This document shows positions 5,690 to 64,000 of a stretch of 64,000 nt of DNA, piece by piece. Origin of the DNA: Ophelia neglecta. Its lineage: Eukaryota. Below the pieces are notes generated by a model. It saw only the letters and a program-made list of their open reading frames with translations. It did no database searches and was not told the origin of the DNA. The translations under genes and the position numbers were made by a program. Positions within the stretch are counted from its first letter, which is position 1, and the number at the start of each line of letters is the position of its first letter. The DNA lies in assembly GCA_965285935.1 (NCBI GenBank), contig OZ260664.1, positions 41,850,001-41,914,000 of the forward strand, in the 5' to 3' direction.

Positions 5690-5724
5690 CAGCAAAATCT
5701 TTATTTAATAACGATTCAAACAAG
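5690..5724 (+). other. Candidate 5' UTR exon
   Basis: Branch-like ccctaac followed by ccattcag acceptor at 5688-5689, and AAG|gtatgt donor at 5725. An upstream exon is needed because the ATG exon starts after an acceptor at 6756-6757. Confidence 0.35.
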
Positions 5725-6758: not shown

Positions 6759-9700
6759 ATGGCGGCGCGTCCCGCCCTTGCAGCCGTTTGGCGGCTGGTG
6801 ACCCCTCACAGAGATCTCCAATCATCGACCAACTGTCACAGTACTTTCGGCAGGACTATTGGTATGTAAGCATAATTCATATTGGATTTTCATTTTATTC
6901 AAATTCATTCAATAGTTTTTTTTCTAGCTAACATTTTGATGCTGAAAAACACTTACATGTATATTGAAATATATTTACGTATGTAAGTTAAGGTTCGAAA
7001 TATGTTATTAAACATCCTTGATTAAACTTGATAAGTATTTGTTACTTTCACGAGAAAAGTATTTTGTCACTTAAACAACAAACGTTGGACGTTGATATAG
7101 CATTATGTTGGAGTATGTGGTCGAAGGGAGTCATACCCCTAAGTCCAGAAGCAGTAAAATTCACAAACTCATATCTGATTTGTACTGACGCACGAGATTC
7201 ATGGCGGTATAAAAAACCGTAGAAGGGGATGTAGTGTGAGACTGGGTTGATGGCCAAACTTACTTTCAAATCATAATGACAAAGTACGAGTTCATAGTTT
7301 TGCATAACATATATCAGGCAATAGTTTTGAAGTATACCTTCTATTACTATTATAGGTTACTTCAGCCTACTGTTGAATAACTTCATTAGTGCACATGTAC
7401 GCTTATGTCGACCCAACATGAAAGTTATACATCTATGCAATATAATTATCACTATCAATGTTACTTCGTTGCTTTAATTAGTTGGGCGCAAATTTAAGAA
7501 TACTATATAGACTATATATCATTGATGAAAGCCTAGTACCCGTCTCCTTATTTAACAGACACACCCAATTTGTGTAGTCAGTTGGCAGCTACGCCACCTC
7601 TATATTTAGCCAGGAACTGTTTTTTTTGTGAGGTATGTCTTATATTTAACATGGTACCGATCAAAATGCTACTGTCAATATTGTCACATGACACTTGTGC
7701 GACCATCCAATATACCCACGCAAACAATGTCATTCATTATTTTTACCGGATGGCGGTATTCACTGTATCTTTTATACTGTTTTGGTATTGAATCATTTAA
7801 CCGCAATGTACTAATGGTTGAGGATTCCATTTTACCCATATTTATACGAAGGTTTTAATTATTTTGTTACTCAGCGCAAGTGTTACCACGGGAGAGACTG
7901 GAACATTGCGCACACACATTATTACCTATTGCATTGTTGAGGTAAAACTTATTTTACAGTTTAAAGATTGATGAAAGTTGTTTTTATGTTCTCGGTTAAT
8001 TTCATAAGCGCGAAAAGACAGCAAGTTACAAGAGTTTGATGTTCTTACTAGCATAACTCGTTACGAATTTCCTCCACTTGCCTTCCTATAGTATATAAGC
8101 ACGCACCCCGAGCTGGAAATGTGTTCGTTCATACAGTTGAAAGGGGGGGGGGGGTGAGAACCAAGACCACACAAGCGCTCATCCTCCGTGACAAATGGTG
8201 GCTGACGGCCACTTTTGAGGGACAATGACTGTCCGTGATCGCCTATCCAAGATCTGACACAACTCTGCTTAAAGACACAATTACCAGCTATAACAAAGGA
8301 TGCTGTGTATCGTGTTAGAATTCTAAGAGCTAATGAAAAAAAAACCTTTTGTCTTATTCTTTGGGACTGGTAATGAGCGTTGGTATTGAGCCATTTGTGA
8401 GGTATCATGTGGGGCTAATTTTCGGGGAACTCTCTCCGCTACAAAAGTGGTCTTAACCAAAGTATGCGTGGGTGCGAAAGAGGCACTTTGCTTAATTCAT
8501 TGTTTTTTCCTCGTGCATCTCTCCCTGCCAGTGTACCTCCATTACACATATGTGTTGATGTTATAAATGGGATTTAATACGTTGACAACCTTATCTTAAT
8601 ATGCAGTATTTGTTATTTTGCCTCCTTTGGACTCCCTGAAGCCAAGCATGCCAAATATTACCTGGAACCAAATTTTTAAATAGGCTGCATTAGGTTTGGT
8701 CTAGCCACTGTCCGTCCTTTTTACTTTATCTATATAGCTGTAGTAGGAAACATATCCTGCCATCTGGTAAACAAGCAAATGTTTTAACGATCTTGAGAAG
8801 CTCTTCTTACAAAACACAGAGCAATCTCACTTTTGTTCTGTATTTCACATCTTCAAGTATTTAGATAACAATATGTTGACTGATCGCCAAGTCGCCTATT
8901 ATCCTAGACATACTTCTTCATTTCTGTCGTAGGATATATAATAATCTAGATAATATAATAATCTTGATAGCGGTGATGGTGACGAAATATTATCAGCCTT
9001 TCTCGGCTCATTGAAGGTTTTTGATAGAGTATACCACACTGGTCTTCCCTTTACGCTACGGCAAGTAGACATCAGGGGTCCTTAGAAAGGCGCCAGGTAG
9101 GATCCCCATGCAAGCACGGTGTTCTTTATGAAACACACGTGGTTTATTGACTAAATGTTTGCTAAACGAAAAATCATGTTATAACAGCGTAAACTAATGT
9201 CCCGCGTGGCGGCCATCTTGGATTTCATCTCGTGCGACCACTAAAAGTATTCATTTCTATCACTTTCTAAAACGTTTGATAATTAATAGGTATATTCATG
9301 ATATTTTAACTTGCTATTAAGATGTGAAGTATTGTTGTCGTCAAGGTCAGTGTTACTCTGTCAAGGTCAAGGAAAAGTTGCGACATTTCTTGTTTTTATC
9401 ATAGTTTTATCCCCATATTTCAAACACTTTTAGTATTGTTTACTAAATATGGCACAAACAAAAAATTCTTCAGAAGTTGGGAAATATACATTTTTCTTTC
9501 GAATATGCTCGAAAAAATGTTCACAAGCCTTCCAGCCCCCCCCCCCCCACCCCCTACCCCCACCCCACCCCGCCCCAATCCCCCACCCCTAACCAACTGC
9601 TTTACATCGAATAATTCGGATCAAAGTATAGTGTATGTAAAGGGAATGTGCAACCCTTCTCGGGCCCGACTTGCTCTGACACTGAGAAGTTAATCCGAGC

Positions 9701-10875
9701 GTTTACCGGCGGCAGCCGAATATTAATAATATTATTTTTATAGTCCCCTATGTCTAGTTGGGGGTATCCGTATAGCATTGTTAACTGAGAACAATGCACA
9801 ATCGTCGAAGGTTTGGGTTAGTTTTGCTAGGATTGGTTGAGTTGGCCAAGGATACGACAACGACACAAGATAGTGTTGTGTCAATACTCAGTAGCCCCGG
9901 GTCAGTAGCAAGGGCAATTAGGCCAACCTGTAGAGTAGTAAATACCAGTCGTGTGAGAAGTATGAGTCTATATAGATTTATGCTGTCGTCCCCTATTGCT
10001 GCAGGCTATATTTTAGTGGCCGTGTCACCGAGGCTTGGCTGGGGGTAGGATGCTGCGTGGTCCCACTGAGAGTAATAGGCCTACACCCTGTATATATTCG
10101 GTGGTATTCTGGCCTCCCTGCAGCAAAGCAATAAATATAATTGGTAAATATTACACACATGTGATCATACTGCGCATGACTTGCAATGCTCTATATGTAT
10201 ACATGTTTCCTTTGCTGTTTCCGGAAAACCTATGAAAGGTGACTGTCAATCAACAGACTTCTTTGTCTCCGTCAAATTCCGGGAGATTTCACGGTATTTC
10301 ATATGTAAAGGTCCTATAGATGTAAATTTTGTCTGATTGTTATCAGATCTTTTTTACAATGTGGATCTGTATTATAGATCCAAAATATGTATTGAAACTT
10401 ATTGTTAAGAATACTCATTTTAATTCATATTTGATTGTGTCTATATATATATCGGAGTTTTCTATCACGCCATTTGATTCCACATTTAGATTCTTTTTTG
10501 CACAATATAGCCTCTAATTGTTTCTCATTGTCCCTCAACCTGCCATTGACAATACCACGTCGTTATGAAAAATATTCCTCTTGTTGTAAACAAAATATGA
10601 TAGGCAAAGAAGACATGCATTTGTGTTTGGTAGCTGAATAGCAGTGATAATATACAATGTGTACTTTTTCTTGTTTTCCAGAAGCATAAATTTGAACAGG
10701 CGAAACTCGTTATTCACGACATGCAGCACATCATTTTGTAAAACAATATAATTCACATCTTCCTATACTATTGTGACATTTCAAATTAAGAACACTTATT
10801 TATTTTCAGGTATAGCAGAACTTTTTGTCATTTTGCTGACAATTTGCCAAACCAGCGTTGAGGCCTTAAGTGTCC
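6759..10875 (+). CDS. Signal-peptide exons (6759-6861, 10810-10875): MAARPALAAVWRLVTPHRDLQSSTNCHSTFGRTIG-IAELFVILLTICQTSVEA/LSV
   Basis: tgttcag|gATG...G|gtatgt (phase 1) joins ttttcag|GT...C|gtaagt (phase 1), which joins ttcag|CC at 12036 in frame. The peptide has a hydrophobic core and a V-E-A cleavage-type motif. Confidence 0.75.
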
Positions 10876-13800
10876 GTAAGTATTTCTTACAATATTATTT
10901 TGACAATCTTATAATATTATGCACTAGTCCTCTATCGAATAAGTTTAGTAACACTACTGCGTGATCCGAACAAAATGATTTCTCCTATATAAATATCATT
11001 CAACAGTTAGTGAAGCAACATTTTTCTGCACTTTCCAATTATCATATTTGTCAGGCCCTGCATATTACTTTGACATTGTGCTCAAACCTACTTGTGCTTT
11101 TCCAATGGGACTTGACTAGTGGTAAAGATGCCAAAATAAGAAATTATTCATACTTTAATGTAAAAGTGTCACACTAACCTCAACTTCGGAGGTATTTCTA
11201 GTTATCTTTCCTCTAGAAAAGGACCTCGTATTTATTTGCTGACCCATGAGATACATTATATTAAAATATATAAATACTTGATGAATATGACGCCTGATAT
11301 ACTTGGCATTCGATCTGTGGACGTGGATGTATAGATATTTATCACCAACCGGTGTTCAAAGCGCTTACCTATCTCTTGACTAAAATTAGTTCCTATCCTG
11401 GTCCGGGTATGCTACTGACATGGTAACCTCCTAGCTGTCGTTGGACCAGGCCTCTACACGCTAGGCATATACATGTATCGACAAATCTCACACAGAACAT
11501 CTTGTATATTTTAAAATTCTGATCAACTTTTGTCAATTGTGCTTTTAAATTTCGTTTTCCACAAAGATATTAATGGCGGTTCTCCCACGCCACCACCACC
11601 TCAACACCCCCCCCCCCCACCCACCCACACCCCGCCCGCCACTGTATGCAACGTATAGCAGCATAATCACCTGTTTCAGTTTAGGGGTCTCATACCCTAT
11701 ACCATGGCAGGGTCAGAACTTTCTCAACCAAATGAATGTACCGTTAACTACTAAATTTTGTATTTAGTAGTTGCGAAAAGGCACATGGCAATGTGAGTCC
11801 TTCTAGGGCAGTGCGAACAACCTTTGTGTTCTGTGTTAGACTTGTAAGTGAATCATTTGCTGGCCTATACCAAGGTTAGCATGTGATATATAGGCCTACC
11901 CTCAATGTGGTAGTATGACTGGATCACTTCTCAGTTCCGGTGCATGCTGCTAGTTATTGACAATTGTTGTTGTTTGTGAATTAATGATATGTTCTACCCG
12001 AAAATCATAAATTCGATATGATATGGCCATTTCAGCCAACCGGGACTGCCCGGCTGTCGACATGAGCCGCGGCAACTCCTTTGCTTTCGCGGTACCCCAG
12101 GGTAAGATCGGAGAGACCATGCCTGATGTCGAGATCATGGTTATCAATGCTGCAAATAATGAAATGCAGGCGTCTATCCGAGGGCCCGGCGCCCCTGGCT
12201 CCAACTCTGTGGTCACTGTATCTACAAAAACACTGTAAGTAGTAATAGATTTCCCCCTACTAAAGTTATTGTCGTTTAAGTATGTTGCCGGTGTCCCTTT
12301 GATCAGAGCCTTCTGGGGCAGATGTTGCCTCTGTGCTCCTTCCTCTCTTTGATCAGTGCCTTCTGAGGCTTCTTGACATGTTAACCCAACAATCCTCCAT
12401 TAACCTTCCATTATCCAGATTATTCAGTCATGGATGAATGTAACTTGAAGTACGGTTAAAAAAACACATCGCGTGATATCAGTCTTAAAGTGGAAAATAT
12501 TTGTCGCGGGCTTAAAAAATACGCTCAGAACTGTTTGATTTATTGGCATTTTTTGCCAACTGAGAATAACCTGAAAGTTTAGTAAAATTTATCAAAATGA
12601 TTTGCATGTAATTCTTTCATTGTTCTTTTACACTAATGATACCGACCATACGCATGACATTTTTAATTTGCGATACCCCAAAATGTGAACTATCAAGTCA
12701 TGATCATCACTACGGTCAGCGATAACACCATAGTTCTAGTGCAGTTTGTTAATCCCAGGGTTAGTGTAAGGCTAGACGGTATGTCCTATTCACAAACTCG
12801 GCCTCTCTCTGTTATACTCAATGCCGGTGACGTGCTGCAGCTCGCTGACCTGAAGGGGGCCGACATGTCCGGCTCACGAATCACGGCTACCAACCCCATA
12901 GCCGTCTTCGGCGGGGTTACAAGCGGTGTCTTCGGACAGCAGCGCCCCAATCTAATGCCAGATTACGTATTGGAACAAATGCCGAGGCCACATAGAACTG
13001 TTGACGATGCTGTAGTAATGTTAACCCACAAGCCAACAAAATTTAGTGGAGATATAACTTACAAGATCGTGGCTATGGATGAGCAAATAGGAGTAAGAGT
13101 AACGGACCTTGAGGGAGTGCCGACAGCAGAAGCCTACACCATGAGGACCGTGGGTGAAACGGTGGTCGAATTGAGGGCGGTGGGAGTAATAAATGTGGCG
13201 TTAGCACTCTACTACAATAAGCCTTCGTTAGTGGCTCATATCCTCCACAGCACTCCAAATCTTCCTATTCATGTATCGTTTGATCTCCAAGCTCCGGCTG
13301 TTGTATTCCCGCCAGCAGCCTCGCAATACAGACGGCAGTACTTTTTCGCCCAACCTAGAAGCTATGGTGGCATCTCCCGTTCAGAGTGGAACGTGCTGGC
13401 GTTTGTCTCTTGGATGACGGTTAATGCCGCTGCCAACCCGATTACGGCCAGAACCGGCGGTGGCGGCACTCTGTTAGCATCGGACTTTGGAGCCGGAACC
13501 AACAACAAAGCCGGAGAATTCTCCGTTGCGGCTTACGTGGTTGACGCAGACTGGGCAGACTTTACAAGTGGGTCGAGTTTCGGGCTCTATGTTGTAGGTT
13601 TTGTCAAAGATAAGCATCAATGCTCATTTGCTTTTACCCCAGACCGATGTACTTCTACGGGTGCCCCTCCAATACTAAAGGTAAGATTAGTTCCAAGTAT
13701 TTTATTGTTTATTTGTTCATTTATACACCTACCAACAGGATAACGCTGGAATATAGCACCTTATCCCTATAGTACGTAAGTACCTTAGCAGGGACGAAAA

Positions 13801-55800: not shown

Positions 55801-58800
55801 ATATTATTCACGGCTGTGATTTTATTCGATCAAACTTGCAGGTATTCCCACCCATTTCCTTATTGTTTTCGATTCTAGGTTGTTCAGTATTCTGTCAGTC
55901 AAATTCAATCACGGGCCACTGCCATTTTGATTCCTGCAGTTGAGCAATGGCTTGACGCTTACACAGTCCCTGTACCAGGAGATTCCTTGTTCAGCAGGTA
56001 TATTAACAGAATGTTCTGCTTCACTACGTACTGATACATGTGAAGTCTTCACGCAATCAATAAATTAGTCAAGATTATCTCTCCGCTTGTTGTTGCCATC
56101 GATGAAATTACTGGTATATCATAACACTACACTTTTTGTTAATGTCCCGTTTTACCATTAAGTGATATATTAATTTTATTGCTCGTATTTGGTATCGCAT
56201 TCTTGAATGATATGTGTTCAGAGATATCTTACTGATTCTTTCAATCGCAACAAGCGAGCCATAATGACTTAATGGCGGTTAAGATAATGACAGGTTAAAG
56301 TCTCAATAAATGTTCCAAAATAGTTTTTCTCTTATTCTACATAGATTCGTCCACATATTTGCCCCTGTTGGAAAAGAGAGGACCGTTCTTGTTAATGGTA
56401 GACCCGTTGACCTGTTCCAGACCACAAATAACAAATGGGAGATCATACCGGGATCAAACCCAGCAATCTCCTATATTAGCCTGCGATATGTCACGGTTAG
56501 AACTTATTTGTTATTACCTTTATTTTCCTTTTGTGGAAGTAATTGGTATTTATTGCACTTCTTTTATATATCAACTGTATTTTTAAGGATACCATACATG
56601 TTAACACCACGGTTGGAAACCTGGCCATTGGAGTAATTATAAATGGCCATAAACCTGCTGATTGCTCATATGGATTTCCAGCAGGGTACTCGGCTAAAGG
56701 GGTAAGTAGTAACTGTAAGATCATGGCGTGTCATTTCTATCCCTATCTTAAGCTTATATCTATAGTAAAATGTCCCTGTCTGACTAAGCATATTCAGTTA
56801 GTTTATGTGTTGGGATTTTAACCATAATTATCTAAATTCTTGCAACATCCGAGTTCAATCTTTACATTCTGGGTGTGTGTTTTTTAGGAGATATTCGATG
56901 TTGCCCTTCCGCCATCTACATCAACCACCTCTGGTCCAATCATTGACCCATTTCCTTCAGGTAATACTGCTGTCTCTTTGATAAACAAACTTCAACCAAT
57001 TTTTGTTCAACCCAGCAATGCTTAAAATGATTTTTTGGGTATTTTGTCTTCGTTTAAGTGCAACTGCTTTAATATTCTGTATGCAGTATAAATAACAACG
57101 TTGTTTTGTAAATACCTTTGGAAAAAAGGTGAATTGATTAAGTACGCCGTCTTAGGGGAAAAGCACTTTGTCTTTATATTATTTCTCTAATCGTAAACGC
57201 TCAAGTTGTCATCTCATAACTCCACAATCGCGAGGGGCAATCAAGGTCCCTTAATAAAATCTGCCAGTGAGCATGTGCTTTCAGCTAAAACCTGATTTTT
57301 ATAAGTTTTACTAAAAGGACATGTTCTTTGTCAGGTGTATAGAGCATCAATGAAGTGGCTTTGGAACTATGATCATGTGTGGAAAAATGTTATTAGGAAA
57401 TTGCACAGACCTTTAGTATGTGATAATGTTAAAATTAACTACCTGAAAAAACCGGTTTTTATTTATTCTTATGTATCATCAATTCTATTTTCCTTGTTAG
57501 CCTCTTGTGAGCAGTCAAACATGGGCAAGGAGTTTATAATTGGATTTGCGCAGAATCCAGTGCAAAACATCAAACTACAAGTATATCCTGCATCCGTAGA
57601 AGCTAAGTTCATAACTGTTAACGTTGAAATACCCAACTCATATCCTAAGGTCGAAGAAACCGTCCAAATTACAGGTGGTCAGGTAAATAAAGTGTTATGA
57701 TTATTTCACATTTAGATACTATTCCTAGTATGCCATATATCAGCCAAAGTATATTTTAACCAAGTAATAAAATATATTTTCACATACCTTTTGATAGGTA
57801 GCCAAGTTTGAATTCCCAGCTGATCTTACCGTCAATGGCATCGGCAGAAGTTCCAATGTGGCTGTTAAGATTCACGCATCTGCAAACATTGGGCTTTTTG
57901 CAGTCAGTCAAGTAAGAATAGCCAGCCGAGCTTGAATCCTTACTTCGACCATGTTTATTCACTGCCCTATGCTATCTTGATATAAAAATTAAAAGAAATG
58001 TATGCAACATGGCAACAAAACGGGTTCTTTTCACTAAACACTACCGAAAGACCATCTCTTTCAACAAAAGTAGAGATTTTCTTCATGATCATTTATGAAC
58101 ACGAAATATACATGGGGTGGGTGCGGGCGTGCTTGTATAGATATTGATATTAAAAAGTATATCAACATTTTCTACCGCCTATGTAGCAAACGATGTTTGC
58201 TTTTTAAGTACCTACCACAGTCCATTATCAATAAATCTTCATTGTATACAGGGAATGGGATCATGCGATGGGTATATGGCATATCCAGTTTTCACCTTGG
58301 GGCAGGCAGCAGCAGGATACACTTACTATACCCTCAGTCATTTCTCCATCAACTCCGGACTAAGTCAGGTGACATTTGTCTCTCCGTACAGCGGCACCAA
58401 TGTTGACATCACTCTCTCCCGTACCGCCGCCGCTATGAATTTCCCAGGGGATGTGGTCAGTATCTTCGTAATATATGTTTCATGTTGGATAAACCCTTCT
58501 GTTCAAGATTTTTATCATATTAACACCAGTCATTTAACTTACAAATGTATTTTTCATTAATTAAAACAGTCAATCTACAGTGGAGGAAGCGTCAAGAAAT
58601 ATATCAATTTGCCCGCTTATGAAGTGGTACAGCTACAGAATCGAGGCGACCTCTCCGGCACCCGTCTGCTGTCAAACTACCCCATTGCAGTTGTGGTCGG
58701 TAACACAAATACTCGGTTGCCTGGAAGCCCGTCTACCTCAGACTCCAGTCACCTCGCTGGTATGGTCCCTCCCCTTCAACTGCTAGGGCGCAACCATTTC

Positions 58801-61800
58801 TTTATACCTATGCCTGGCCGTACTAATGGCTACAATATCAAGGTGAGCTGGTCGCATAGTATAATCAATTTTTTTATTTGTGTTTCATACTATATACAGT
58901 GATCAATGGATAACATCATAAGCGTAGAATATAAAACGACAAAAAGAGTACAAATAAAGACATAAAGCAAAAGGACTGTCTACTTTACTAAATCATGTTG
59001 TGTTGAATCATCAATGGCATCATGGCAGAGAGAATTCATACGGGCAGAGTGGTTATTGTATAAGTTGTGTACCGTCATATACACGCATACACGCTCATAT
59101 AAACATAAAGACCCCTTCATAATTACATATCCAAGGGGTCAGGGGTAAGACAGAAATGGGGCAGGTGTGACTAATGACTCAATCGGCGACATTTTCCCCC
59201 TTCAGTTCGAAGTAAAATCTGTGCTTAAACGGCTTCAGAAAGTGCAAAACTTCGCTGCTAGATTGGTTACTAAAATACGTGACCGCATTACACCGGGCTT
59301 GTATGATTTGCACTGGGTTCACGTGAAACACGGAATTGATTTCAAGCCTTCGTTGATGGCGTACAAGGTTCAGAATGGAGACGTCGCTGTGTGCATCTTC
59401 GAGCTGCTGCAGAGATACGAACCTACTCGTGCTCTGCAGTCAAAGAAACTATTACTTGTTAGACCAAAAATATGTGATGATCATAATCCACTTGCTAAGG
59501 ATTTTAAATTGAGTAATGCATATTTTTCAAATCTGACTGCTGTTGTAATAAGCAATGTTTTTTTGCATCCATATCTATTTGTTCACATATATTGTGAAGC
59601 TCCTTTGAACTTGACGTACTTAGGATGCTTAGCGCTATGTTAATGCTGCTATTATTATTATAAAATGTAAGTTCCATTCATTACTTTAATGCAGTTTACA
59701 ATCGATGTTTCGTTTAGATTGTGTCGACTACAGGTAACACTGCGGTTACAATCGGAGGAACCGTCGTTAAAACCATGCCATCGGCCGGGGAGACGTTTGT
59801 TTACGAGCCTCAATCAGCAACCGAAAGTGTCTTGGTGTCGACCAACAATCCTGTGTTGGCAGCGCAAATGATGAAAGGTATGTTCACCCGAGCTAGATGG
59901 GCGTTAAATATATTTTTTTTACAATTAGCGAGAGAATTAGCCCCTGAGCTCAACTTCATACAAACGTTGGCAGGTTAAAAAGAGCGCACGTGCTTCCAGT
60001 ATCATGCTTTTTAAGCTGTCATGCAAAAGCAAAAGCAGTTACTGTTGATTTTTGGATTACTTGAACCTATTTTTGGATTACTTGACCCTATTTTTGGATT
60101 TCTTGACCCTATTTTCCAACAAAACCATTTTCATAGTTACAAAAACACGTCTACCTTCACTAATGGTTCAACCTCCGACTTGTTACCTCTATTTTGATAA
60201 GTACTATCAATTTGTCTCTTTGATGTTACAAAGGTTCCAACACAGGCTCGACCAGCAGTGATCCCAGTATGTTAATCATACCTGCCCAGGAGACATGGAG
60301 ATCACAGTACACCTTCTCCACAATGCGAACAAGTGATTCAAATTTCACAAACCATGTTATTGTTGTAATACAAACATCAAAGGTACTCAAATATACCTTG
60401 TTTATTAAAATGTCGTTATTCACATTACCTAAAAGATATATAATTGGTCCTTCATAGGTGAGCATGTACTGGCTATTCTTTCCAGATACAATTCCTAAGG
60501 CTGGATAACCAGCTAGTGGACCCAAACGGTTGGGTGTCTATTCCAAGCAGTAGTCCTCTTATGTCTGGAAAAGCGCTTAGTATCAATGTAGGCATTCATT
60601 TCCTGACGACATCTAGTGGTGGCAAATTTGGTGCATACGTCTACGGTAATTCAGACAGTACATGTTCGTACTCCTACCCTGCCGGACAATGCGCATCTAA
60701 CTTGGTAAATACTCTTATCAATCAACAATATAAATCATCGTAAAATAATGAGAAATATACCCAAATAGGGAACCTTTCAATCGTTTCGAAAATCAATAGC
60801 AAATAAAGCCATCGTATAGGTTTTTTGCATTTCATCTCTTTCTGTTTTGTAGATTTCTAAAATGAATACAGGCGGTAAGTATGGGTTTTAGCTTTACCTT
60901 ATCAATTTTACGATTTTTGTTTTGCACAAGTCATTCAACATTCACATTTAATTAGTTTAACCTGATTATTGATTCAAATTTTGCTTGTGGCTCTGGTTTG
61001 ATTACATATTCTATTCGGCGACACTCAATTTCAATGTGTTTGTGTTGTATTTTTCCGACTTGAAGCCACTGGTGATAATACTGGATATACATTTGTGGCA
61101 CCTTATCCTGCCAACTGGGTGGGTACGGTTAAGATGTCATCGGAATCTGCGAGCGATGTGGCGGCTACAATCTCCTATCCGGGAATCACTGCAGCATGTA
61201 AGCAAAAATCACATATATATTCGCCGTAACACACAACTTATTTTACAAGCATGCTATTCAAGATTTACATTGTTTCTGTTGTAGGGCCAACAACTGTCAG
61301 ACGCGGCTCCCCTCAGGCATTCGATCTGACTGCCACTCCGACACCAGGACTGATAACTGTATTGGCCACAGGCATAATTTCCGTGCAAATTCAGGTAAAA
61401 TATATATTCCAGGTTTAATATTCCAACTGGTAGTTAGATAATAATCTTTACTTTTCGCAATGAAATAGTTTATCAAATGTATTTTATCCTTTAGTTGCAT
61501 TTTTTTGGAATTTCGTATTATTTTTTCTTTTTCTTATCAGCAAAGAGGACAAGGCTGCGCCGGGTACTTAGCAGTTGCATTTGAGAACTACGACAAGAAC
61601 TATGTGGTGACAACATGGAATAAGGATTCGGTTGTGTATATAGTATCGAACACAACCGAAAACGTAATAACTGGTACGTTTGGTGGGTCCGCTGCCACCC
61701 CGATAACATGGAGCGGCTCAACCTCTGGTGGAAACAGCAACGGTGGCAGCACCTTCTCAATAGATATGCGCCTGCATGGAAACTTCATAACTTTCACCAG

Positions 61801-64000
61801 CCCTGGTGACCTTAGCCTGACCAGTATCAACGCTCTTTCTCCCGTTGGTGTCTTTGCTGGCAACAAGAAAATTGCAATCGGCGAAACCACATCAAGCTTC
61901 ATGGATATAAACATGGAACAAATCCTGCCCACGTCGACATGGGGAAAGACGTTTTATATCCCCAACGTCCCAGGTATGCCTGAAATGTTTATTTGATATT
62001 TGACTGTGATATTTAACAGTGGTGACTGTTGGGGTGGGGACAGGAGGTTAAGCCCCTCCCCCCCCCCCCAATACCCACCTCCTCCTCCCTAATTTGTGTT
62101 TACAGATTGATCCCACGAGGGTCAGCTAAAAAAACTAAAAAATCAGTTGTCGAAAGGAATATTTAAACAAAATGACATTCAAAAGACTCATTTTTCAAAG
62201 CATGTCCTTGTTTATTTTGCCTTCCTACTAGGTTCTTCCAATGGGTATTATATCAAGGTAATAAGTTTAAAAACTGATACTACTATCACGGTGATTCCTT
62301 CTACCCCAATCACCAGAGCGGTGGGTTCCAACAAGATGGAGGAAGTGGAAATCAGTGACAATAGCGCTGCAATGCTGACCTCTAACCATCATATACAGGT
62401 ATGTGAACATGGATTAGATATGTTGTTAAAAATAAACATTGCCTTCACATGGATATATTACATTCACATATCTAAAAAAAACATGTTTGCACCAGTAATT
62501 GTAAAAAAAAACTCAATTTAATAGAAATTATCCATCATTAAAGGTGATTCAGTATGTGAAGAGCAAGACAACGTCTTCAGGGTCTGGTTTTCCAACCTCC
62601 TTTAACATAGTACCTGTGGAACAATACAATACCCATTACATCATCCGTCCAGTAGCTCCAAGTGACGTCACAACTGGTGTCAGTTATTTTATTACCATCA
62701 TCTGTAGGTCGGCTGATCTACCAGGACTTATTGTCAATGGTAATGCTCTTAACAAGTTACCAAAATACTTCGCAAAAAGCATATACGTAGTCTAGAACCA
62801 ACTTGAATCATCGATAGCCCATAAGGTTTTAGTTGATAAGTTACACCTGGCATCCATTTTGTTTGATATCAAAGAATACATGTGCGTTCCGTTGCAGGTG
62901 TGCCAGCCATCAACACTGTCGGATGGCGAATCCTTCAGGGTTCAAACCCGGAAACCCAAGCAACTACTTTTCTTGTACAACCTATTGAACAATATCTCAC
63001 ACACAACAACAAAAAGACGTTTGGCGTGTTTATGTACGTTGTTGACGATAACCCTAGTGGGTGTGCTTACGGACATCCAGCGGGTACCAGACTAAGCAAG
63101 ATAAATGTAAGTCCATATAACCGCGCAACGCTTAAACTTTTCTTTTGTTATATCGCTGCGTTGATTTTTGCGATGTTTGTGGTTAAATGGTAACTTTGGT
63201 AGCTTTGCGATCAAACCTTTTAGATAAATAATGATTATAAAACGAATGACTGTATAAATCAAAAATCTTTATATCGTTTTAAGTCGCAATCTTGTCTTTG
63301 CAGACCGGTGTTTTACCTGCACCAGAAACTGACGGAAATTCCTTTGCTGTTGTAGTAAACGATAATGACAGTAAGCTTTTCTATCAATCAAAGTACCACT
63401 GGAATTATATAGTTTCATGAGAATTATTAAATTTTAAATAACATTGTTATCTAATGGGTTTGCACCTTCAACACTGGTCAGTGTTGGATACATTAATGGC
63501 CTCTGTCTTTCGTTCTACATCAAACAGAAGAACGCTATTTCTCTTCTCAGTTGGGTGTACAAACAACAACCGTGGAACGGACTTTGTTCTGGTTTATATG
63601 CAAAATGGTGTCACCCAAAGTGATTTAGAACTACAGCTTTACCCAGCCTATACACGCTCTAATCAGATAACAGCTACCATCACCACACCCAAATATCTCG
63701 TCGGCGGGAATATGGCCATTAACCAACAGGTAGAAAATAAATAAAAGATTTTGATATAAAATCACCCTCAACCGTTTATGCAATCAACGCTGTTCACGAT
63801 AACACATTTAGGAACTAAAGGAAAGTAGTAAATACGTGTGTTTTTTATCGCTCGGATTCTTTGTTGGTGTTCGTTGACTGTGTGCTTAAATCAGTCTCAT
63901 GTTCTCATTATAAGGTGACACTTGTTGGAGGTAATGCTTCCCTAGTAACTATAAACAAAAACCTAATGGTAACGGGAACAAGAAAACAGCCCTATGGAAT
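6759..64000 (+). CDS. Giant secreted protein with at least 14 tandem IgGFc-binding-protein N-terminal-like domains, one CBM14 chitin-binding domain and a Gly-rich linker; about 103 coding exons, about 6,090 aa in window, 3' incomplete
   Basis: Manual exon chaining with GT-AG boundaries keeps one open frame, with matching phases at all junctions (one doubtful acceptor in repeat 1). Recurring FCGBP-N-type motifs such as DHIVEQMPPINTYGKEY, DLSGTKITATGRIAVWTG and FGAYxY..C appear once per repeat. No in-frame stop was found before the window end. Confidence 0.88.
9190..9520. repeat. Probable interspersed-repeat fragment (ggcggccatcttgga / caaggtca motifs)
   Basis: Motif combination typical of invertebrate non-autonomous repeats. 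Related motifs occur at about 13900-14200 (atggctgcc, tgaccttgacct) and about 23790 (aaaatggccggcg). Confidence 0.4.
12036..13680 (+). CDS. IgGFc-binding-like repeat 1 (exons 12036-12234 and ~12720-13680; second acceptor uncertain)
   Basis: DCPAVDMSRGNSFAF...; ADMSGSRITATNPIAVFGG; DYVLEQMP; FGLYVVG...CSFAFTPDRC; donor AAG|gtaaga at 13681. Confidence 0.75.
14047..14086. repeat. 10-bp tandem repeat (aggtcaaatc) x4
   Basis: aggtcaaatc aggacaaatc aggtcaaatc aggtcaaatc. Confidence 0.9.
14580..14607 (+). CDS. Linker microexon 1 (28 nt, PNAQMNEPF)
   Basis: ttacag|...|gtgagt; supplies the phase 0 to 1 bridge required between repeats. Confidence 0.75.
15906..18480 (+). CDS. IgGFc-binding-like repeat 2 (exons 15906-15977, 16100-16324, 17285-18480)
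   Basis: TCPIGSLEGGKY...; YKCGMIRALPDTALGYDYY; DISGIHI; FGAVMH...CTMSFVGGACLK; all phases match. Confidence 0.85.
18703..18721 (+). CDS. Linker microexon 2 (19 nt, PKTDPE)
   Basis: ttttcag|...G|gttagt; phase 0 to 1. Confidence 0.75.
19101..22062 (+). CDS. IgGFc-binding-like repeat 3 (exons 19101-19234, 19353-19470, 19730-20043, 20192-20561, 20763-20979, 21918-22062)
   Basis: VCVSGSHTGTKFYL; GGCGGFHLLPERSLGQFY; GHMVEQAIP; FGAYLYE...CSVGHALDFC. Confidence 0.88.
21100..21730. repeat. Degenerate inverted repeat / foldback element in an intron
   Basis: agagacagaagta (21331-21343) pairs with tacttctgtctct (21574-21586), with weaker similarity extending both ways. The left arm is purine-rich with a G run and the right arm is pyrimidine-rich with a C run. 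Confidence 0.55.
22176..22206 (+). CDS. Linker microexon 3 (31 nt, IPATGVIPAN)
   Basis: tttcag|...G|gtaagt; phase 0 to 1. Confidence 0.8.
22317..25768 (+). CDS. IgGFc-binding-like repeat 4 (exons 22317-22431, 22538-22664, 22877-23040, 24169-24273, 24469-24623, 24771-24974, 25281-25768)
   Basis: DYLGKQFYFTF; GGCGATMVIPRDALGSDYY; DFTGTRVQ; DHIVEQMPPINTYGKEY; FGLTVYG...FCAIS. Confidence 0.88.
23113..23162 (+). repeat. Dispersed ~50-bp repeat, with a second copy at 34155-34205 and a partial copy near 44884
   Basis: tattcttgaataatgatttgcctttgtctgccgggtatccatccccgttt aligns with tattcttgactgatgatttggcgtaagtctgccgggtatctacgcccgttt; probably a decayed SINE-like fragment. Confidence 0.55.
26239..26257 (+). 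CDS. Linker microexon 4 (19 nt, KADTAE)
   Basis: Long T tract, ccag|...G|gtagga; phase 0 to 1. Confidence 0.7.
26398..29764 (+). CDS. IgGFc-binding-like repeat 5 (exons 26398-26499, 26615-26733, 27026-27233, 27848-28000, 28121-28314, 28599-28763, 29071-29231, 29389-29467, 29600-29764)
   Basis: VCHSSFAGVEFY; SGCGATQLLP; DLSGTYIHSDTRIAVFSG; MEQLPPTHTFGRQY; FGAWIF...CTVAYNAGSCI. Confidence 0.88.
29834..30176. mobile_element. MITE / non-autonomous DNA transposon (343 bp) with perfect 24-bp terminal inverted repeats
   Basis: ccagcggcataaagtctggagact (29834-29857) is the exact reverse complement of agtctccagactttatgccgctgg (30153-30176). Flanks are tatt / tata, an imperfect TSD. No coding capacity. 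Confidence 0.8.
30533..30572 (+). CDS. Linker microexon 5 (40 nt, PDPIPPISAVPAT)
   Basis: cattcatag|...G|gtaagc; phase 0 to 1. Confidence 0.8.
30779..32872 (+). CDS. IgGFc-binding-like repeat 6 (exons 30779-30969, 31080-31331, 31507-31801, 32043-32186, 32487-32872)
   Basis: VCNADYSGKRFVVMF; ACGSYQVIPTDAIGWNYY; DYMVEQLTP; FGAYMY...CSALQTIGFCL. Confidence 0.88.
31810..31899. repeat. Compound microsatellite (TGAT)n followed by (TTTAC)n
   Basis: Directly visible just after the donor at 31802. Confidence 0.95.
32991..33027 (+). CDS. Linker microexon 6 (37 nt, PVIPDPAVHQAA)
   Basis: tttctag|...T|gtaagt; phase 0 to 1. Confidence 0.78.
33201..36003 (+). CDS. IgGFc-binding-like repeat 7 (exons 33201-33325, 33569-33667, 33751-33855, 33987-34053, 34303-34466, 34674-34923, 35089-35320, 35504-35616, 35846-36003)
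   Basis: RCNTDYFGRFFVL; EGCGAFQVIPFDGLGYTY; DFVVEQMLP; FGAYIF...CSIAYQAGGCL. Confidence 0.88.
36541..36583 (+). CDS. Linker microexon 7 (43 nt, PQPRLTTTTIAPIN)
   Basis: ttgcag|...G|gtaagg; phase 0 to 1; Pro/Thr-rich. Confidence 0.8.
36960..41081 (+). CDS. IgGFc-binding-like repeat 8 (exons 36960-37165, 37423-37530, 38442-38735, 38962-39111, 39462-39688, 40407-40524, 40899-41081)
   Basis: QCTLDYEGDEFIFTF; GGCGGFQVLPKESLGYSYY; DHIVEQMMP; FGAYLYG...CSILTQIGMCL. Confidence 0.88.
41575..41626 (+). CDS. Linker exon 8 (52 nt, TTIPPEPPTTRSPEPMP)
   Basis: ttacag|...G|gtaaac; phase 0 to 1; mucin-like P/T content. Confidence 0.8.
41947..46494 (+). CDS. IgGFc-binding-like repeat 9 (exons 41947-42071, 42743-42939, 43570-43749, 44454-44742, 45345-45601, 45890-46049, 46384-46494)
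   Basis: RCRKDYIGREFALVF; GNCGGYMAIPTDAL; DHTVEQLPPVTTFGREF; FGATVYG...CAYGYPAGMCL. Confidence 0.9.
46802..46991 (+). CDS. Chitin-binding type-2 (peritrophin-A / CBM14) domain exon
   Basis: CPNPSITEKIIDPTTCSSYYVCAFGRLLKQDCPSTYEFSPVVRTCVPAQQAFC has spacing C-x14-C-x5-C-x9-C-x12-C-x7-C, with the typical DPxxCxxYYxC and CPxxxxF motifs. The exon is phase 0 to 1. Confidence 0.9.
47869..50662 (+). CDS. IgGFc-binding-like repeat 10, divergent (exons 47869-48099, 48331-48593, 48761-49003, 49176-49387, 49797-49911, 50185-50270, 50560-50662)
   Basis: EEGRRYHIAL; GSCSDYKPLP; DMSGTYIFG; SMIPVDSWSRNF; FMAWQY...GGCNK; phases consistent. Confidence 0.85.
50845..53042 (+). CDS. Gly-rich low-complexity linker (exons 50845-51031 and 52959-53042)
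   Basis: GVAGTP-GLGVTG-GAGFTS-GVGVTA-GIGGTQ-...-GIGGAP-GIGATG, then GASFTGIAGTTTPTTISTSAAAIIPPV; phases 0 to 1 and 1 to 1. Confidence 0.8.
53351..56701 (+). CDS. IgGFc-binding-like repeat 11 (exons 53351-53523, 53686-53748, 53933-54040, 54262-54428, 54587-54731, 55223-55330, 55602-55766, 55879-55997, 56345-56495, 56588-56701)
   Basis: STYGTRFVL; GSCAIYTALP; DLTGTLI; IQLMPVINLGSNY; IPAVEQW; DCSYGFPAG. Confidence 0.85.
56888..56960 (+). CDS. Linker exon 11 (73 nt, EIFDVALPPSTSTTSGPIIDPFPS)
   Basis: tttttag|...G|gtaata; phase 0 to 1. Confidence 0.8.
57501..60704 (+). CDS. IgGFc-binding-like repeat 12 (exons 57501-57682, 57798-57911, 58252-58455, 58570-58842, 59718-59877, 60234-60382, 60486-60704)
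   Basis: SCEQSNMGKEFIIGF; GSCDGYMAYP; DLSGTRLLSNYPIAVVVG; DPSMLIIP; FGAYVYG...CSYSYPAGQC. Confidence 0.9.
59205..59662 (+). mobile_element. 5'-truncated non-LTR retrotransposon remnant (L2/CR1-group LINE ORF2 C-terminus plus 3' tail)
   Basis: LQKVQNFAARLV...ITPGLYDLHW..VK..IDFK...AYK..NG...YEPTRALQS is the characteristic post-RT C-terminal segment. It ends in gcgctatgttaatgctgctattattatta, a short tandem-repeat tail. Confidence 0.8.
60048..60115. repeat. 21-bp tandem repeat x3 (atttttggattacttgaccct)
   Basis: Three near-identical copies; these produce the spurious DYLxLFL ORF. Confidence 0.9.
60853..60874 (+). CDS. Linker microexon 12 (22 nt, ISKMNTG)
   Basis: ttttgtag|...G|gtaagt; phase 0 to 1. 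Confidence 0.78.
61066..63106 (+). CDS. IgGFc-binding-like repeat 13 (exons 61066-61197, 61285-61394, 61541-61973, 62232-62398, 62544-62739, 62898-63106)
   Basis: DNTGYTFVA; QGCAGYLAV; PVGVFAGN; MEQILPTSTWGKTF; FGVFMY...CAYGHPAG. Confidence 0.88.
63304..63370 (+). CDS. Linker exon 13 (67 nt, TGVLPAPETDGNSFAVVVNDND)
   Basis: ctttgcag|...A|gtaagc; phase 0 to 1. Confidence 0.75.
63551..64000 (+). CDS. IgGFc-binding-like repeat 14, partial (exons 63551-63729 and 63915->64000)
   Basis: GCTNNNRGTDFVLVYMQN...LELQLYP; the second exon is open to the window end. Confidence 0.85.

What the first reader, a model, noticed from the sequence alone, without database searches (positions are those of the whole stretch)
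6759..64000. Giant secreted string of at least 14 IgGFc-binding-like domains with no vWD modules
Seen: one continuous spliced ORF of more than 6,000 aa built almost entirely from diverged ~430-aa FCGBP-N-terminal-like repeats after a signal peptide. Established: vertebrate FCGBP uses this domain as an N-terminal cap on vWD-C8-TIL arrays with GDPH cleavage sites. Here the domain itself is the repeating unit and no vWD or GDPH was seen. Inference: a beads-on-a-string extracellular matrix or mucus protein (with a chitin anchor) whose architecture may be undescribed. An ORF-based annotation would break it into dozens of hypothetical fragments.
Basis: partly seen in the sequence, partly recalled or inferred. 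Interest (0 to 1): 0.85.

Follow-up and report, generated by a model that had tools for sequence, protein, structure and literature searches.

The report
Giant tandem IgGFc-binding-domain matrix gene
The window holds most of one very large, intron-rich animal gene whose protein is a chain of at least 14 diverged copies of the poorly understood "IgGFc-binding N-terminal" domain with one chitin-binding domain in the middle. This is an unusually long version of an architecture so far described only in frog skin glue proteins.

Summary
The domain array is real. Pfam IgGFc_binding (PF17517) matches 25 of 89 modelled exons (best E 4.6e-29) and CBM_14 matches one. No VWD, C8 or TIL domain and no GDPH motif was found. 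My spliced model from 12036 to the window end has 102 exons and 5,917 aa: 13 complete units of about 430 aa plus the start of a 14th.

One gene fits better than a gene cluster:
- All 13 units end in a phase-0 donor, and all 14 start at a phase-1 acceptor without an ATG.
- The units are joined by Pro/Thr-rich mini-exons, all phase 0 to 1.
- A related metagenome contig carries the same units in the same order (13 of 13 positional orthologues, at least 19 units). There the CBM_14 exon sits between introns of 123 and 142 nt.

A better signal-peptide-like exon lies at 10810-10875 and has counterparts in two related loci. N-glycosylation sequons are depleted about six-fold, which fits passage through the secretory pathway.

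The architecture is not wholly undescribed. Amphibian PRIT glue proteins are tandem IgGFc-binding domains without VWD. The new features here are the number of units, the short linkers, the internal chitin-binding domain and the unit-by-unit orthology. Function is inferred, not shown.

The parts
6759..6861 (+).
   Evidence: Starts with ATG and ends with a GTATGT donor in phase 1. That phase fits the acceptors at 10810 and 12036. Hydrophobicity is weak. It has no Pfam hit and no counterpart in related loci.
10810..10875 (+). Signal-peptide-like exon, (x)IAELFVILLTICQTSVEALSV, phase 1 to 1. The ATG must lie in an exon further upstream.
   Evidence: Acceptor ttattttcag and donor GTAAGT. Counterparts lie upstream of unit A in ctgR (5539-5586, VLLLVLLPVTDALAT) and in L002 (ending at 1944, TLFIVLTMFHSLKAQSA).
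12036..13680 (+). Unit A (2 exons, 386 aa)
   Evidence: Pfam IgGFc_binding E 1.7e-20. Model. Orthologues are ctgR unit A and L002.
14580..14607 (+). Linker mini-exon PNAQMNEPF (28 nt, phase 0 to 1)
   Evidence: The peptide is identical in L002, with only synonymous DNA changes. ctgR has a related 31-nt exon. All three are bounded by AG and GT, and the flanks cannot be aligned.
15906..18480 (+). Unit B (3 exons, 497 aa; main exon 17285-18480)
   Evidence: Pfam E 6.1e-29. It is 40% identical to P0001 and P0002.
18703..18721 (+). Linker mini-exon PKTDPE (phase 0 to 1)
   Evidence: Model only.
19101..22062 (+). Unit C (6 exons, 432 aa)
   Evidence: HMM hits. 45% identical to ctgR unit C.
22176..22206 (+). 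Linker mini-exon IPATGVIPAN (phase 0 to 1)
   Evidence: Model only.
22317..25768 (+). Unit D (7 exons, 452 aa)
   Evidence: Pfam E 4e-10 on its last exon. 48% identical to ctgR unit D.
26239..26257 (+). Linker mini-exon KADTAE (phase 0 to 1)
   Evidence: ctgR has KPKTAE at the same junction.
26398..29764 (+). Unit E (about 9-10 exons, 425 aa)
   Evidence: Pfam E 4.3e-13. 43% identical to ctgR unit E. The modelled split at 29636/29706 is probably wrong, because 29600-29767 aligns to ctgR without a break.
30533..30572 (+). Linker mini-exon PDPIPPISAVPAT (phase 0 to 1)
30779..32872 (+). Unit F (5 exons, 422 aa)
   Evidence: Pfam E 3.1e-11. 38% identical to ctgR unit F.
32991..33027 (+). Linker mini-exon PVIPDPAVHQAA (phase 0 to 1)
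   Evidence: ctgR has VAIPEPAVNEAQ at the same junction.
33201..36003 (+). Unit G (9 exons, 437 aa)
   Evidence: Pfam E 2.7e-21. 40% identical to ctgR unit G. The AF2 model of that orthologue has pLDDT 89.9 and pTM 0.92.
36541..36583 (+). Linker mini-exon PQPRLTTTTIAPIN (phase 0 to 1)
   Evidence: ctgR has PQPATTTTTVAPRA at the same junction.
36960..41081 (+). Unit H (7 exons, 428 aa)
41575..41626 (+). Linker mini-exon TTIPPEPPTTRSPEPMP (phase 0 to 1)
41947..46494 (+). Unit I (about 7-8 exons, 441 aa)
   Evidence: The 6-nt exon modelled at 43051-43056 is doubtful.
46802..46991 (+). CBM_14 (peritrophin-A) chitin-binding exon: 190 nt, six Cys, phase 0 to 1, donor GTAAGT
   Evidence: Pfam E 6.4e-10. 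The ctgR orthologous exon is also 190 nt and lies between introns of 123 and 142 nt.
47030..47032 (+). In-frame stop reached if the CBM_14 donor is not used. It overlaps AATAAA at 47028.
   Evidence: It allows, but does not show, a short isoform that ends after the CBM_14.
47869..50662 (+). Unit J (6 exons, about 375 aa; diverged C-terminal motif)
50845..51031 (+). Gly/Thr/Pro-rich low-complexity linker exon (…TPGLGVTGGAGF…GGTPGIGGAPGIGAT)
   Evidence: ctgR has a region of the same composition at 26130-26264.
52959..53042 (+). Second low-complexity linker exon (…GTTTPTTISTSAAAIIPPV)
53396..56701 (+). Unit K (10 exons, 422 aa)
   Evidence: 38% identical to ctgR unit K.
56888..56960 (+). Linker mini-exon EIFDVALPPSTSTTSGPIIDPFPS (phase 0 to 1)
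   Evidence: In ctgR the similar ISDTALPPNAATVTTSGPTIDD is fused to the first exon of unit L.
57501..60704 (+). Unit L (7 exons, 415 aa)
60853..60874 (+). Linker mini-exon ISKMNTG (phase 0 to 1)
   Evidence: Model only.
61066..63106 (+). Unit M (6 exons, 415 aa)
   Evidence: Pfam E 7.1e-15..
63304..63370 (+). Linker mini-exon TGVLPAPETDGNSFAVVVNDND (phase 0 to 1)
   Evidence: ctgR has a Pro/Ser/Thr-rich mini-exon at the same junction.
63551..64000 (+). Unit N, first exons only. The gene runs off the window.
   Evidence: GCTNNNRGTDFVLVYMQNG... is 52% identical to ctgR 32201-32362. ctgR continues for at least five more units.

Best explanation
**What it is.** Bases about 10.8-64 kb on the + strand are the 5' two thirds or less of one very large, intron-rich metazoan gene. 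I cannot place the organism more precisely.

**Protein layout.**
- It starts with a signal peptide split over two exons.
- It continues as a beads-on-a-string chain of compact, all-beta FCGBP_N (IgGFc_binding) modules of about 430 aa.
- The modules are joined by short Pro/Thr-rich linkers of 6-24 aa, each on its own mini-exon.
- One six-Cys peritrophin-A (CBM_14) chitin-binding module lies between units 9 and 10.
- One Gly/Thr/Pro-rich disordered stretch of about 90 aa lies between units 10 and 11.

**How it arose (inferred).** The array grew by duplication of a frame-neutral cassette: a unit running from phase 1 to phase 0 plus a linker running from phase 0 to phase 1. The units then diverged, and each now keeps its own positional identity across species.

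**Likely role (inferred, not shown).** It is probably a secreted structural or adhesive fibre. The CBM_14 would tether it to chitin, and the many FCGBP_N modules would act as rigid or sacrificially unfolding binding beads. This is comparable to the role proposed for amphibian PRIT glue proteins.

**Status of each step.**
- Shown: domain content, frame continuity, conserved splice phases and colinear orthology.
- Inferred: single transcript, secretion, chitin binding and the mechanical or adhesive role.
For: **Domain content**

**Junction structure**
- 13 of 13 unit-terminal exons end 4-11 codons after the last Cys in a phase-0 GT donor resembling GTAAGT.
- 14 of 14 unit-first exons begin at a phase-1 acceptor just before the C..Y.G.eF motif, without an ATG.
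- 11 mini-exons and the CBM_14 exon are all phase 0 to 1, and the mini-exons are Pro/Thr-rich.
- A phase-0 exit in all 13 units has a chance of about (1/3)^13.

**Comparison with related loci**
- The related ENA contig ERZ25069296:ctg21414_2x_l (ctgR) carries at least 19 units. For 13 of 13 window units the best match is the unit at the same position (29-48% identity, against 24-34% for the best paralogue of each unit). It also has the CBM_14 at the same place.
- In ctgR the gaps between units are only about 90-450 nt. The CBM_14 exon is flanked by introns of 123 and 142 nt, and the next exon starts in phase 1 without a Met.
- The A-B linker mini-exon is conserved at the peptide level with synonymous DNA changes in three loci, while its flanks cannot be aligned.

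**Secretion**
- A signal-peptide-like exon lies upstream of unit A in three loci.
- N-x-S/T sequons number 9 against 54.7 +/- 6.6 in shuffles (window) and 10 against 78.3 +/- 7.7 (ctgR). The control motifs are at normal levels.

**Fold**
- The AF2 model of a canonical unit is one compact all-beta body, with pLDDT 89.9 and pTM 0.92.

**Precedent**
- PRIT proteins are tandem IgGFcBD without VWD that act in a glue (PMC11237159).
Against: - There are no transcript data.
- The exon model comes from my own dynamic-programming parser, guided by a local HMM and by conservation. Some small exons are surely wrong, for example 43051-43056 and the split at 29636/29706.
- The ATG exon is not identified in any locus, and no SignalP run was possible.
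- In the window the 877-nt intron after the CBM_14 exon holds an in-frame stop overlapping AATAAA. A shorter isoform or a gene end there cannot be excluded for this species.
- The biochemical function of FCGBP_N is unknown, and its reported IgG binding could not be reproduced (PMC11796319).
- The Foldseek searches gave no informative structural relative.
- The 3' end of the gene lies outside the window.
Confidence: 0.72

Rival explanations
1. The array is a tandem cluster of about 14 separate genes, each encoding one secreted FCGBP_N protein of about 450 aa.
For: - Nearly all database relatives of unit B are single-domain proteins of 390-490 aa.
- Gene callers split the related contig into separate ORFs.
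- Reading past each unit-terminal donor meets a stop within 2-45 codons.
Against: - The single-domain relatives examined are bacterial-type proteins or prokaryote-style calls on eukaryotic DNA.
- No unit-first exon has an ATG or a signal peptide.
- All units end in a conserved phase-0 donor. Read-through tails all begin with the Val codon of that GT and are otherwise unrelated.
- Gaps between units in ctgR are about 90-450 nt, too short for a 3' UTR, a promoter and a first exon.
- The A-B linker mini-exon is conserved.
Confidence: 0.04
2. There are two products. A first gene or isoform ends just after the CBM_14 exon, at the stop at 47030 and AATAAA at 47028. Units J onward are then a second gene, or an alternative long isoform.
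For: - If the CBM_14 donor is skipped, the reading frame ends 13 codons later, in a stop that overlaps a polyA signal.
- The following intron is long in the window (877 nt).
- A C-terminal chitin-binding domain would be a conventional design.
Against: - The CBM_14 exon ends in a perfect GTAAGT donor in phase 1, matching the phase-1 acceptor of unit J.
- In ctgR the same 190-nt exon is followed by a 142-nt intron and then unit J, with no Met and no room for a promoter.
- Unit J has no ATG or signal-peptide exon of its own.
Confidence: 0.12
3. The units are catalytic, as in the Bombina peptidyl-aminoacyl L/D-isomerase that carries the same domain. The protein would then be a poly-enzyme, not a structural fibre.
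For: A frog skin L/D-isomerase (UniProt Q58PK6) was a strong hit to the IgGFcBD-containing PRIT-Dg protein (e = 2e-101), as reported in PMC11237159.
Against: - His is rare in the protein (1.2%). No His is invariant or nearly invariant across units and relatives; the conserved columns are D, P, L, Y, T, Q and F.
- Fourteen to nineteen diverged copies joined by Pro/Thr linkers, together with a chitin-binding module, fit a scaffold better.
- I did not have the isomerase sequence, so I made no direct comparison.
Confidence: 0.05
4. The array is a decaying or unexpressed relic (pseudogene).
For: There are no expression data. Units J and K have weakened terminal Cys motifs.
Against: - About 5,900 codons in the window and about 8,600 in ctgR remain open across more than 100 splice junctions.
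- Unit order, splice phases and a mini-exon are conserved between loci that are only 29-48% identical.
- The specific loss of N-x-S/T sequons implies continuing selection.
Confidence: 0.03

Closest known systems
[quoted passage not shown]
   Same: - Secreted protein built from several tandem IgGFc-binding domains of about 390-430 aa.
- No VWD supradomains and low Cys content.
- Arose by exon or cassette duplication.
- Gly/Pro/Thr-rich disordered material between domains. Here this occurs only between units J and K.
   Different: - PRIT has one to at least four domains. This gene has at least 14 in the window and at least 19 in the related contig.
- PRIT domains are separated by 12-24 copies of an 18-aa O-glycosylated PG repeat. 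Here most linkers are 6-24 aa.
- PRIT has no CBM_14.
- PRIT is a vertebrate lineage derived from a VWD-containing gene cluster. No orthology to it was tested or is implied.
Vertebrate FCGBP (IgGFc-binding protein)
   Same: Same Pfam domain (PF17517, FCGBP_N). Large secreted mucus-associated protein.
   Different: FCGBP has one (rarely two) N-terminal copies, followed by up to 13 VWD-C8-TIL assemblies with GDPH autocleavage. None of these is present here.
Invertebrate FCGBP_N proteins surveyed by Lang et al. 2016 (PMC4948705)
   Same: FCGBP_N without VWD is the usual invertebrate condition. The domain is found across Metazoa except arthropods.
   Different: That survey stresses that the domain is N-terminal in the large majority of proteins. 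It mentions at most two copies in its main text and no long arrays. Its supplementary figure was not available to me.
Bacterial FCGBP_N surface proteins (CHU_C/T9SS, PKD; gliding bacteria, Myxococcales)
   Same: Same domain, at 25-33% identity to unit B. They are secreted or cell-surface proteins. One relative has three tandem copies (P0015).
   Different: They are prokaryotic. The domain usually occurs once, at the N-terminus, with CHU_C, PKD or Ig-like partners.
Peritrophins and other CBM_14 chitin-binding matrix proteins
   Same: One six-Cys peritrophin-A module on a symmetric-position exon within a large secreted protein.
   Different: Peritrophins are built mainly of CBM_14 repeats, with or without mucin domains. 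Here CBM_14 is a single insert occupying a linker position.

Membership tests
Pfam IgGFc_binding (PF17517) domain family | HMM match above the gathering score of 25.6 bits | tested here: met
   Single exons score up to 101.7 bits (E 6.1e-29). 25 of 89 modelled exons match.
Vertebrate FCGBP | Multiple VWD-C8-TIL assemblies after the N-terminal domain | tested here: not met
   No VWD, C8 or TIL hit in any of the 89 exons or in the long stop-free stretches.
Vertebrate FCGBP | GDPH autocatalytic cleavage motifs | tested here: not met
   No GDPH in the 5,917-aa model.
PRIT-like architecture (PMC11237159) | Several IgGFcBD in tandem in one polypeptide, without VWD | tested here: met
   13 complete units plus 1 partial unit in one frame-consistent chain. 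The single-gene reading rests on splice phases and the comparative locus. It is not confirmed by RNA.
PRIT-like architecture (PMC11237159) | Long interdomain arrays of disordered PG-rich repeats bearing O-glycan sites | tested here: not met
   Linkers are 6-24 aa. Only the J-K junction has a Gly/Thr/Pro-rich region of about 90 aa, and it has no regular 18-aa repeat.
PRIT-like architecture (PMC11237159) | N-terminal signal peptide | tested here: inconclusive
   A hydrophobic exon followed by small residues lies upstream of unit A in three loci. The ATG exon was not found and no SignalP was available.
PRIT-like architecture (PMC11237159) | Descent from the amphibian PRIT gene lineage | not tested
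   No PRIT sequence was available in the tools. The CBM_14 and the dense short introns suggest a non-amphibian, probably invertebrate source, but the taxon is unknown.
CBM_14 / peritrophin-A chitin-binding domain | HMM match above the gathering score of 22.1 bits, and six conserved Cys | tested here: met
   36.5 bits, E 5.5e-9 (stretch) and 6.4e-10 (exon). Six Cys lie in 46802-46991.
CBM_14 / peritrophin-A chitin-binding domain | Binding to chitin | not testable with these tools
   Needs a pull-down with the recombinant domain.
Gel-forming mucins | VWD-C8-TIL N-terminal assemblies, long PTS domains and a C-terminal cystine knot | tested here: not met
   There are no VWD, C8 or TIL domains. PTS-like material is limited to short linkers. 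The C-terminus is outside the window.

The most novel reading that the evidence does not exclude
This is a previously uncharacterised class of giant invertebrate extracellular fibre protein, more than 8,600 aa with at least 19 modules. It is made almost only of FCGBP_N modules that are not interchangeable: each keeps its own positional orthologue between species. It is tethered to chitin by one internal CBM_14 and has been purged of N-glycosylation sequons. It would be the purest natural source of the FCGBP_N domain, and so a direct handle on what that domain does. That question has been open since FCGBP was cloned in 1997.
Probability: 0.4. Interest if true: 0.65.

Novelty: new variant of a known kind. 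Interest (0 to 1): 0.55.

Why it matters
The FCGBP_N domain occurs from gliding bacteria to human gut mucus. Its function is unknown, and the IgG binding that named it could not be reproduced. A protein built almost entirely of this domain offers three things:
- It has 14 to 19 or more diverged, individually conserved copies and a built-in chitin anchor. That makes it a natural system for asking what the domain binds or how it behaves mechanically.
- It extends the tandem-IgGFcBD design beyond frog glues.
- It shows how ORF-based or prokaryote-style gene calling hides such genes. The related contig is annotated as dozens of unrelated fragments.

The six- to eight-fold loss of N-glycosylation sequons in both orthologues is an unusual, testable signature of constraint on a secreted fibre.

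Tried and rejected
- **Profile from window exons.** MAFFT alignment of exon fragments (A1) misaligned them, so I did not use it. It gave 127 hits, none with more than 3 matched stretches. A single diverged unit as query has limited sensitivity, so this does not prove that long arrays are absent elsewhere.
- **N-terminal part of the units.** A local HMM seeded from 47853-48149 found nothing. These parts were recovered later through the exon parser and conservation.
- **Upstream region, 1-12 kb.** Pfam found nothing on either strand, and tblastx to related loci found nothing conserved upstream of 12023.
- **Start exon.** ATG plus signal-peptide scans gave only weak candidates: 9794 MHNRRRFGLVLLGLV..., 9962/9980, and 'MK' at 10232. 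The ATG exon was not resolved in the window, ctgR or L002.
- **Solved structures.** The PDB sequence search with profile A2 gave no hit. Foldseek against the PDB with two models gave only TM of 0.18 or less, to generic multi-beta-sandwich proteins.
- **More relatives.** Two scans of metagenome contigs and one homologous-protein search with the ctgR unit G exon found nothing more, apart from one ENA protein at 27% identity (P0134).
- **Other features.** Rfam and tRNA scans found nothing.
- **Taxon and sample.** The source organism could not be determined. A literature search for the ENA sample accession gave nothing.
- **Joined model.** Those searches were made exon by exon, by reference.
Full report

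The window is AT-rich eukaryotic DNA (GC 35-46%) with no N. All ORFs of 120 aa or more lie on the + strand. Seven of the ten longest stop-free stretches match Pfam IgGFc_binding (PF17517), with E from 4e-10 to 6e-29. One stretch, 46694-47029, matches CBM_14 at E 5.5e-9.

I iterated a local HMM from the one nearly complete single-exon unit (17245-18549). It maps pieces of about 13 repeat units in model order from 12.7 kb to the window end, all on the + strand. This is far beyond chance.

**2. Gene model**

No gene finder was available, so I wrote one. It combines a 3-periodic Markov coding score trained on the HMM hits, generic donor and acceptor matrices, and exact phase and stop bookkeeping (reused).

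The best chain has 114 exons. Upstream of 12036 the exons are small and score poorly. From 12036 to 64000 the chain has 102 exons and 5,917 aa without a stop. These form 13 complete units (A-M, 375-497 aa) and the start of unit N.

Some small exons are certainly wrong. The 6-nt exon at 43051 is doubtful. The split at 29636/29706 is contradicted by an unbroken alignment to the related contig. The coordinates in 'parts' are therefore a working model.

A Pfam census of all 89 modelled exons of 20 aa or more found the following:
- IgGFc_binding in 25 exons
- CBM_14 in one exon
- one marginal chance hit
- no VWD, C8 or TIL

GDPH does not occur in the model.

Those searches were made exon by exon, by reference. 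Exons were joined only inside local scripts, to count lengths, identities and motifs. Full-length-model searches (SignalP, InterPro architecture, a full-length homology search) were left out.

**3. One gene or a cluster?**

Three lines of evidence favour one gene.

(a) Splice logic:
- Every unit-terminal exon (13 of 13) ends 4-11 codons after the last Cys in a phase-0 GT. The donor sequences include GTAAGA, GTACGC, GTCAGT, GTAAAC, GTAATT, GTAAGT, GTTGGC, GTAAGC, GTGAGT, GTATGT and GTAAAT.
- Every unit-first exon (14 of 14) begins at a phase-1 acceptor just before the motif C..(D)Y.G.eF. None has an ATG or a signal peptide.
- Each pair of units is bridged by a mini-exon of 19-73 nt, always phase 0 to 1, encoding Pro/Thr-rich peptides such as PDPIPPISAVPAT, PQPRLTTTTIAPIN and TTIPPEPPTTRSPEPMP.
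- The 190-nt CBM_14 exon has the same phase class and occupies one such linker position.
- The repeated cassette (unit phase 1 to 0, linker phase 0 to 1) is frame-neutral, as expected for an array that grew by cassette duplication inside one gene.

(b) A related locus:
- The only close relatives of unit B among 1.84 billion representative proteins are two unnamed ENA gene calls at about 40% identity (P0001, P0002).
- They lie on two contigs of one metagenome assembly, ERZ25069296. I read the 42,140-bp contig in four overlapping loci (L001, L003, L004, L005) and call it ctgR.
- ctgR has fewer introns and at least 19 units, and the array reaches to within about 90 bp of the contig end.
- For each of the 13 window units, the best ctgR match is the unit at the same position. 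Identity is 29-48%, against 24-34% for the best paralogue of each unit inside the window. The CBM_14 also lies between units 9 and 10.
- In ctgR the gaps between units are about 90-450 nt, and several linkers are fused to the next unit's first exon.
- In ctgR the CBM_14 exon is again 190 nt and phase 0 to 1. It lies between introns of 123 and 142 nt, and the next exon (…TNGESGKHYYIPLP…) has no Met. That leaves no room for a gene boundary.

(c) The A-B linker mini-exon (window 14580-14607, PNAQMNEPF):
- Its peptide is identical in the second contig (L002), with only synonymous DNA differences.
- ctgR has a related 31-nt exon.
- All three are bounded by AG and GT, and the flanks cannot be aligned.

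The rival of separate single-domain genes is therefore very unlikely.

One caveat is specific to the window. If the donor after the CBM_14 exon is skipped, the frame ends 13 codons later, in a stop that overlaps AATAAA, inside an 877-nt intron. A shorter isoform ending there cannot be excluded.

**4. The 5' end and secretion**

But MAARPALAAVWRLV… is only weakly hydrophobic. Nothing between 6.2 and 12 kb matches Pfam or the related loci.

In ctgR a 48-nt exon 116 nt upstream of unit A encodes VLLLVLLPVTDALAT. It has no ATG, and it is phase 1 to 1. Searching the window for the same kind of exon gave 10810-10875. It has the acceptor ttattttcag and the donor GTAAGT, is phase 1 to 1, and encodes (x)IAELFVILLTICQTSVEALSV. 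L002 has TLFIVLTMFHSLKAQSA, ending in a phase-1 donor, about 680 nt upstream of its unit A.

This looks like the hydrophobic core and cleavage region of a signal peptide split by an intron. The ATG exon is unresolved in all three loci.

N-glycosylation sequons give independent, indirect support for passage through the ER:

| Motif | Window (5,917 aa) | ctgR (8,617 aa) |
|---|---|---|
| N-x-S/T, observed | 9 | 10 |
| N-x-S/T, residue shuffles | 54.7 +/- 6.6 | 78.3 +/- 7.7 |
| [ST]-x-N (control) | 45 | 81 |
| D-x-S/T (control) | 60 | 96 |
| Q-x-S/T (control) | 48 | 70 |
| N-x-A/G (control) | 59 | 77 |

Only the true sequon is depleted, and it is depleted in both orthologues.

**5. Structure and likely working**
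- AlphaFold2 on the ctgR orthologue of unit G, with a 38-sequence alignment, gives one compact all-beta body covering the whole 457-aa unit (mean pLDDT 89.9, pTM 0.92).
- The atypical unit B orthologue gives pLDDT 75 and pTM 0.81, with a poorly modelled N-terminal 125 residues.
- Foldseek against the PDB gives only TM of 0.18 or less, to generic multi-beta-sandwich proteins such as complement MG domains, bacterial adhesins and pilins. A profile search of PDB sequences finds nothing.
- Each unit has about 2-8 Cys (most have 3-4). The linkers are short and Pro/Thr-rich.
- Between units J and K lies a Gly/Thr/Pro-rich region of about 90 aa. ctgR has a region of the same composition.

My best reading is a secreted beads-on-a-string fibre that is tethered to chitin through its single CBM_14. 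Positional orthology shows the FCGBP_N beads are not interchangeable. They would act as rigid or sacrificially unfolding and/or ligand-binding modules. This functional step is inference.

**6. Comparison with what is known**
- Lang et al. 2016 (PMC4948705) defined FCGBP_N. They found it in 176 invertebrate proteins, mostly without VWD, and in many bacteria. They stressed that it is N-terminal in the large majority of proteins.
- The function of the domain in FCGBP is unknown, and IgG binding could not be reproduced (PMC11796319).
- The closest described architecture is PRIT, the key protein of tomato-frog skin glue (PMC11237159). PRIT has a signal peptide and one to at least four IgGFcBD of about 390 aa without VWD, made by exon duplication. 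Its domains are separated by long disordered PG-rich, O-glycosylated repeats.
- The present gene shares the tandem-domain, VWD-free design. It differs in having 14 to 19 or more units, mostly very short linkers and an internal CBM_14, and probably in lineage.
- It is not a member of the FCGBP or gel-forming mucin families, because VWD-C8-TIL and GDPH were tested and not found.
- The same paper notes that a Bombina L/D-isomerase carries the domain. No His is conserved across the units, so I rate a catalytic role as unlikely, but I could not compare the sequences.

**7. Novelty and verdict**

The domain and the idea of tandem IgGFcBD without VWD are known. Four features are not described in anything I could search:
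- the scale of the array
- conserved unit-by-unit orthology
- the embedded chitin-binding module
- the sequon depletion

No protein matched by unit B in the representative library has more than three matched stretches. That search is weakly sensitive, and the InterPro architecture tables could not be queried.

I rate this a new variant of a known kind, of moderate interest (0.55). The source organism is unknown. Nothing here resembles human sequence, and no step needed referral.

Noticed in passing
whole model, window 12036-64000, and ctgR (L001/L003/L004/L005): N-glycosylation sequons (N-x-S/T) are specifically depleted about six- to eight-fold: 9 against about 55 expected in the window, and 10 against about 78 in ctgR. 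The control motifs (reversed sequon, D/Q-x-S/T, N-x-A/G) are at normal levels.
   Followed up: partly
window versus ctgR, all units: Intron density differs greatly between the orthologues. The window has 102 exons for about 13.5 units. ctgR has about 65 exons for 19 units, and six of its units are single exons. This points to extensive intron gain or loss inside a conserved array, while the phases at unit boundaries are kept.
   Followed up: partly
L002 (ERZ25069296:ctg10448_3x_l) versus L001: The same metagenome sample holds two different loci with A-like and B-like units. L002 is closer to the window than ctgR is (59% against 50% identity in the best-conserved block of unit A). They may come from two related species or be two paralogous genes. 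This is not resolved.
   Followed up: no
window 50845-51031 and 52959-53042: The Gly/Thr/Pro-rich low-complexity linker (…TPGLGVTGGAGF…GGTPGIGGAPGIG…, TTTPTT) occurs only between units J and K. Its composition recalls the PG-rich interdomain repeats of frog PRIT glue proteins.
   Followed up: partly
window 47028-47033: AATAAA overlaps the first in-frame stop after the CBM_14 exon donor. This could be the site of an alternative short isoform.
   Followed up: no
window 31833-31899 and 60048-60115: Two intronic tandem repeats: (TTTAC)x13.4, a perfect repeat, and a 21-bp unit x3.2.
   Followed up: no
window 1-10800: No recognisable gene, Pfam domain, tRNA or Rfam family was found on either strand upstream of the array. 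Stop-free stretches of 70-117 aa on the - strand (3037-5112, 7051-8414) have no Pfam match.
   Followed up: partly
P0015 (ENA, 1412 aa): This relative, from unnamed ENA contigs, has three tandem IgGFc_binding domains. Small arrays of the domain therefore also occur outside this gene.
   Followed up: no
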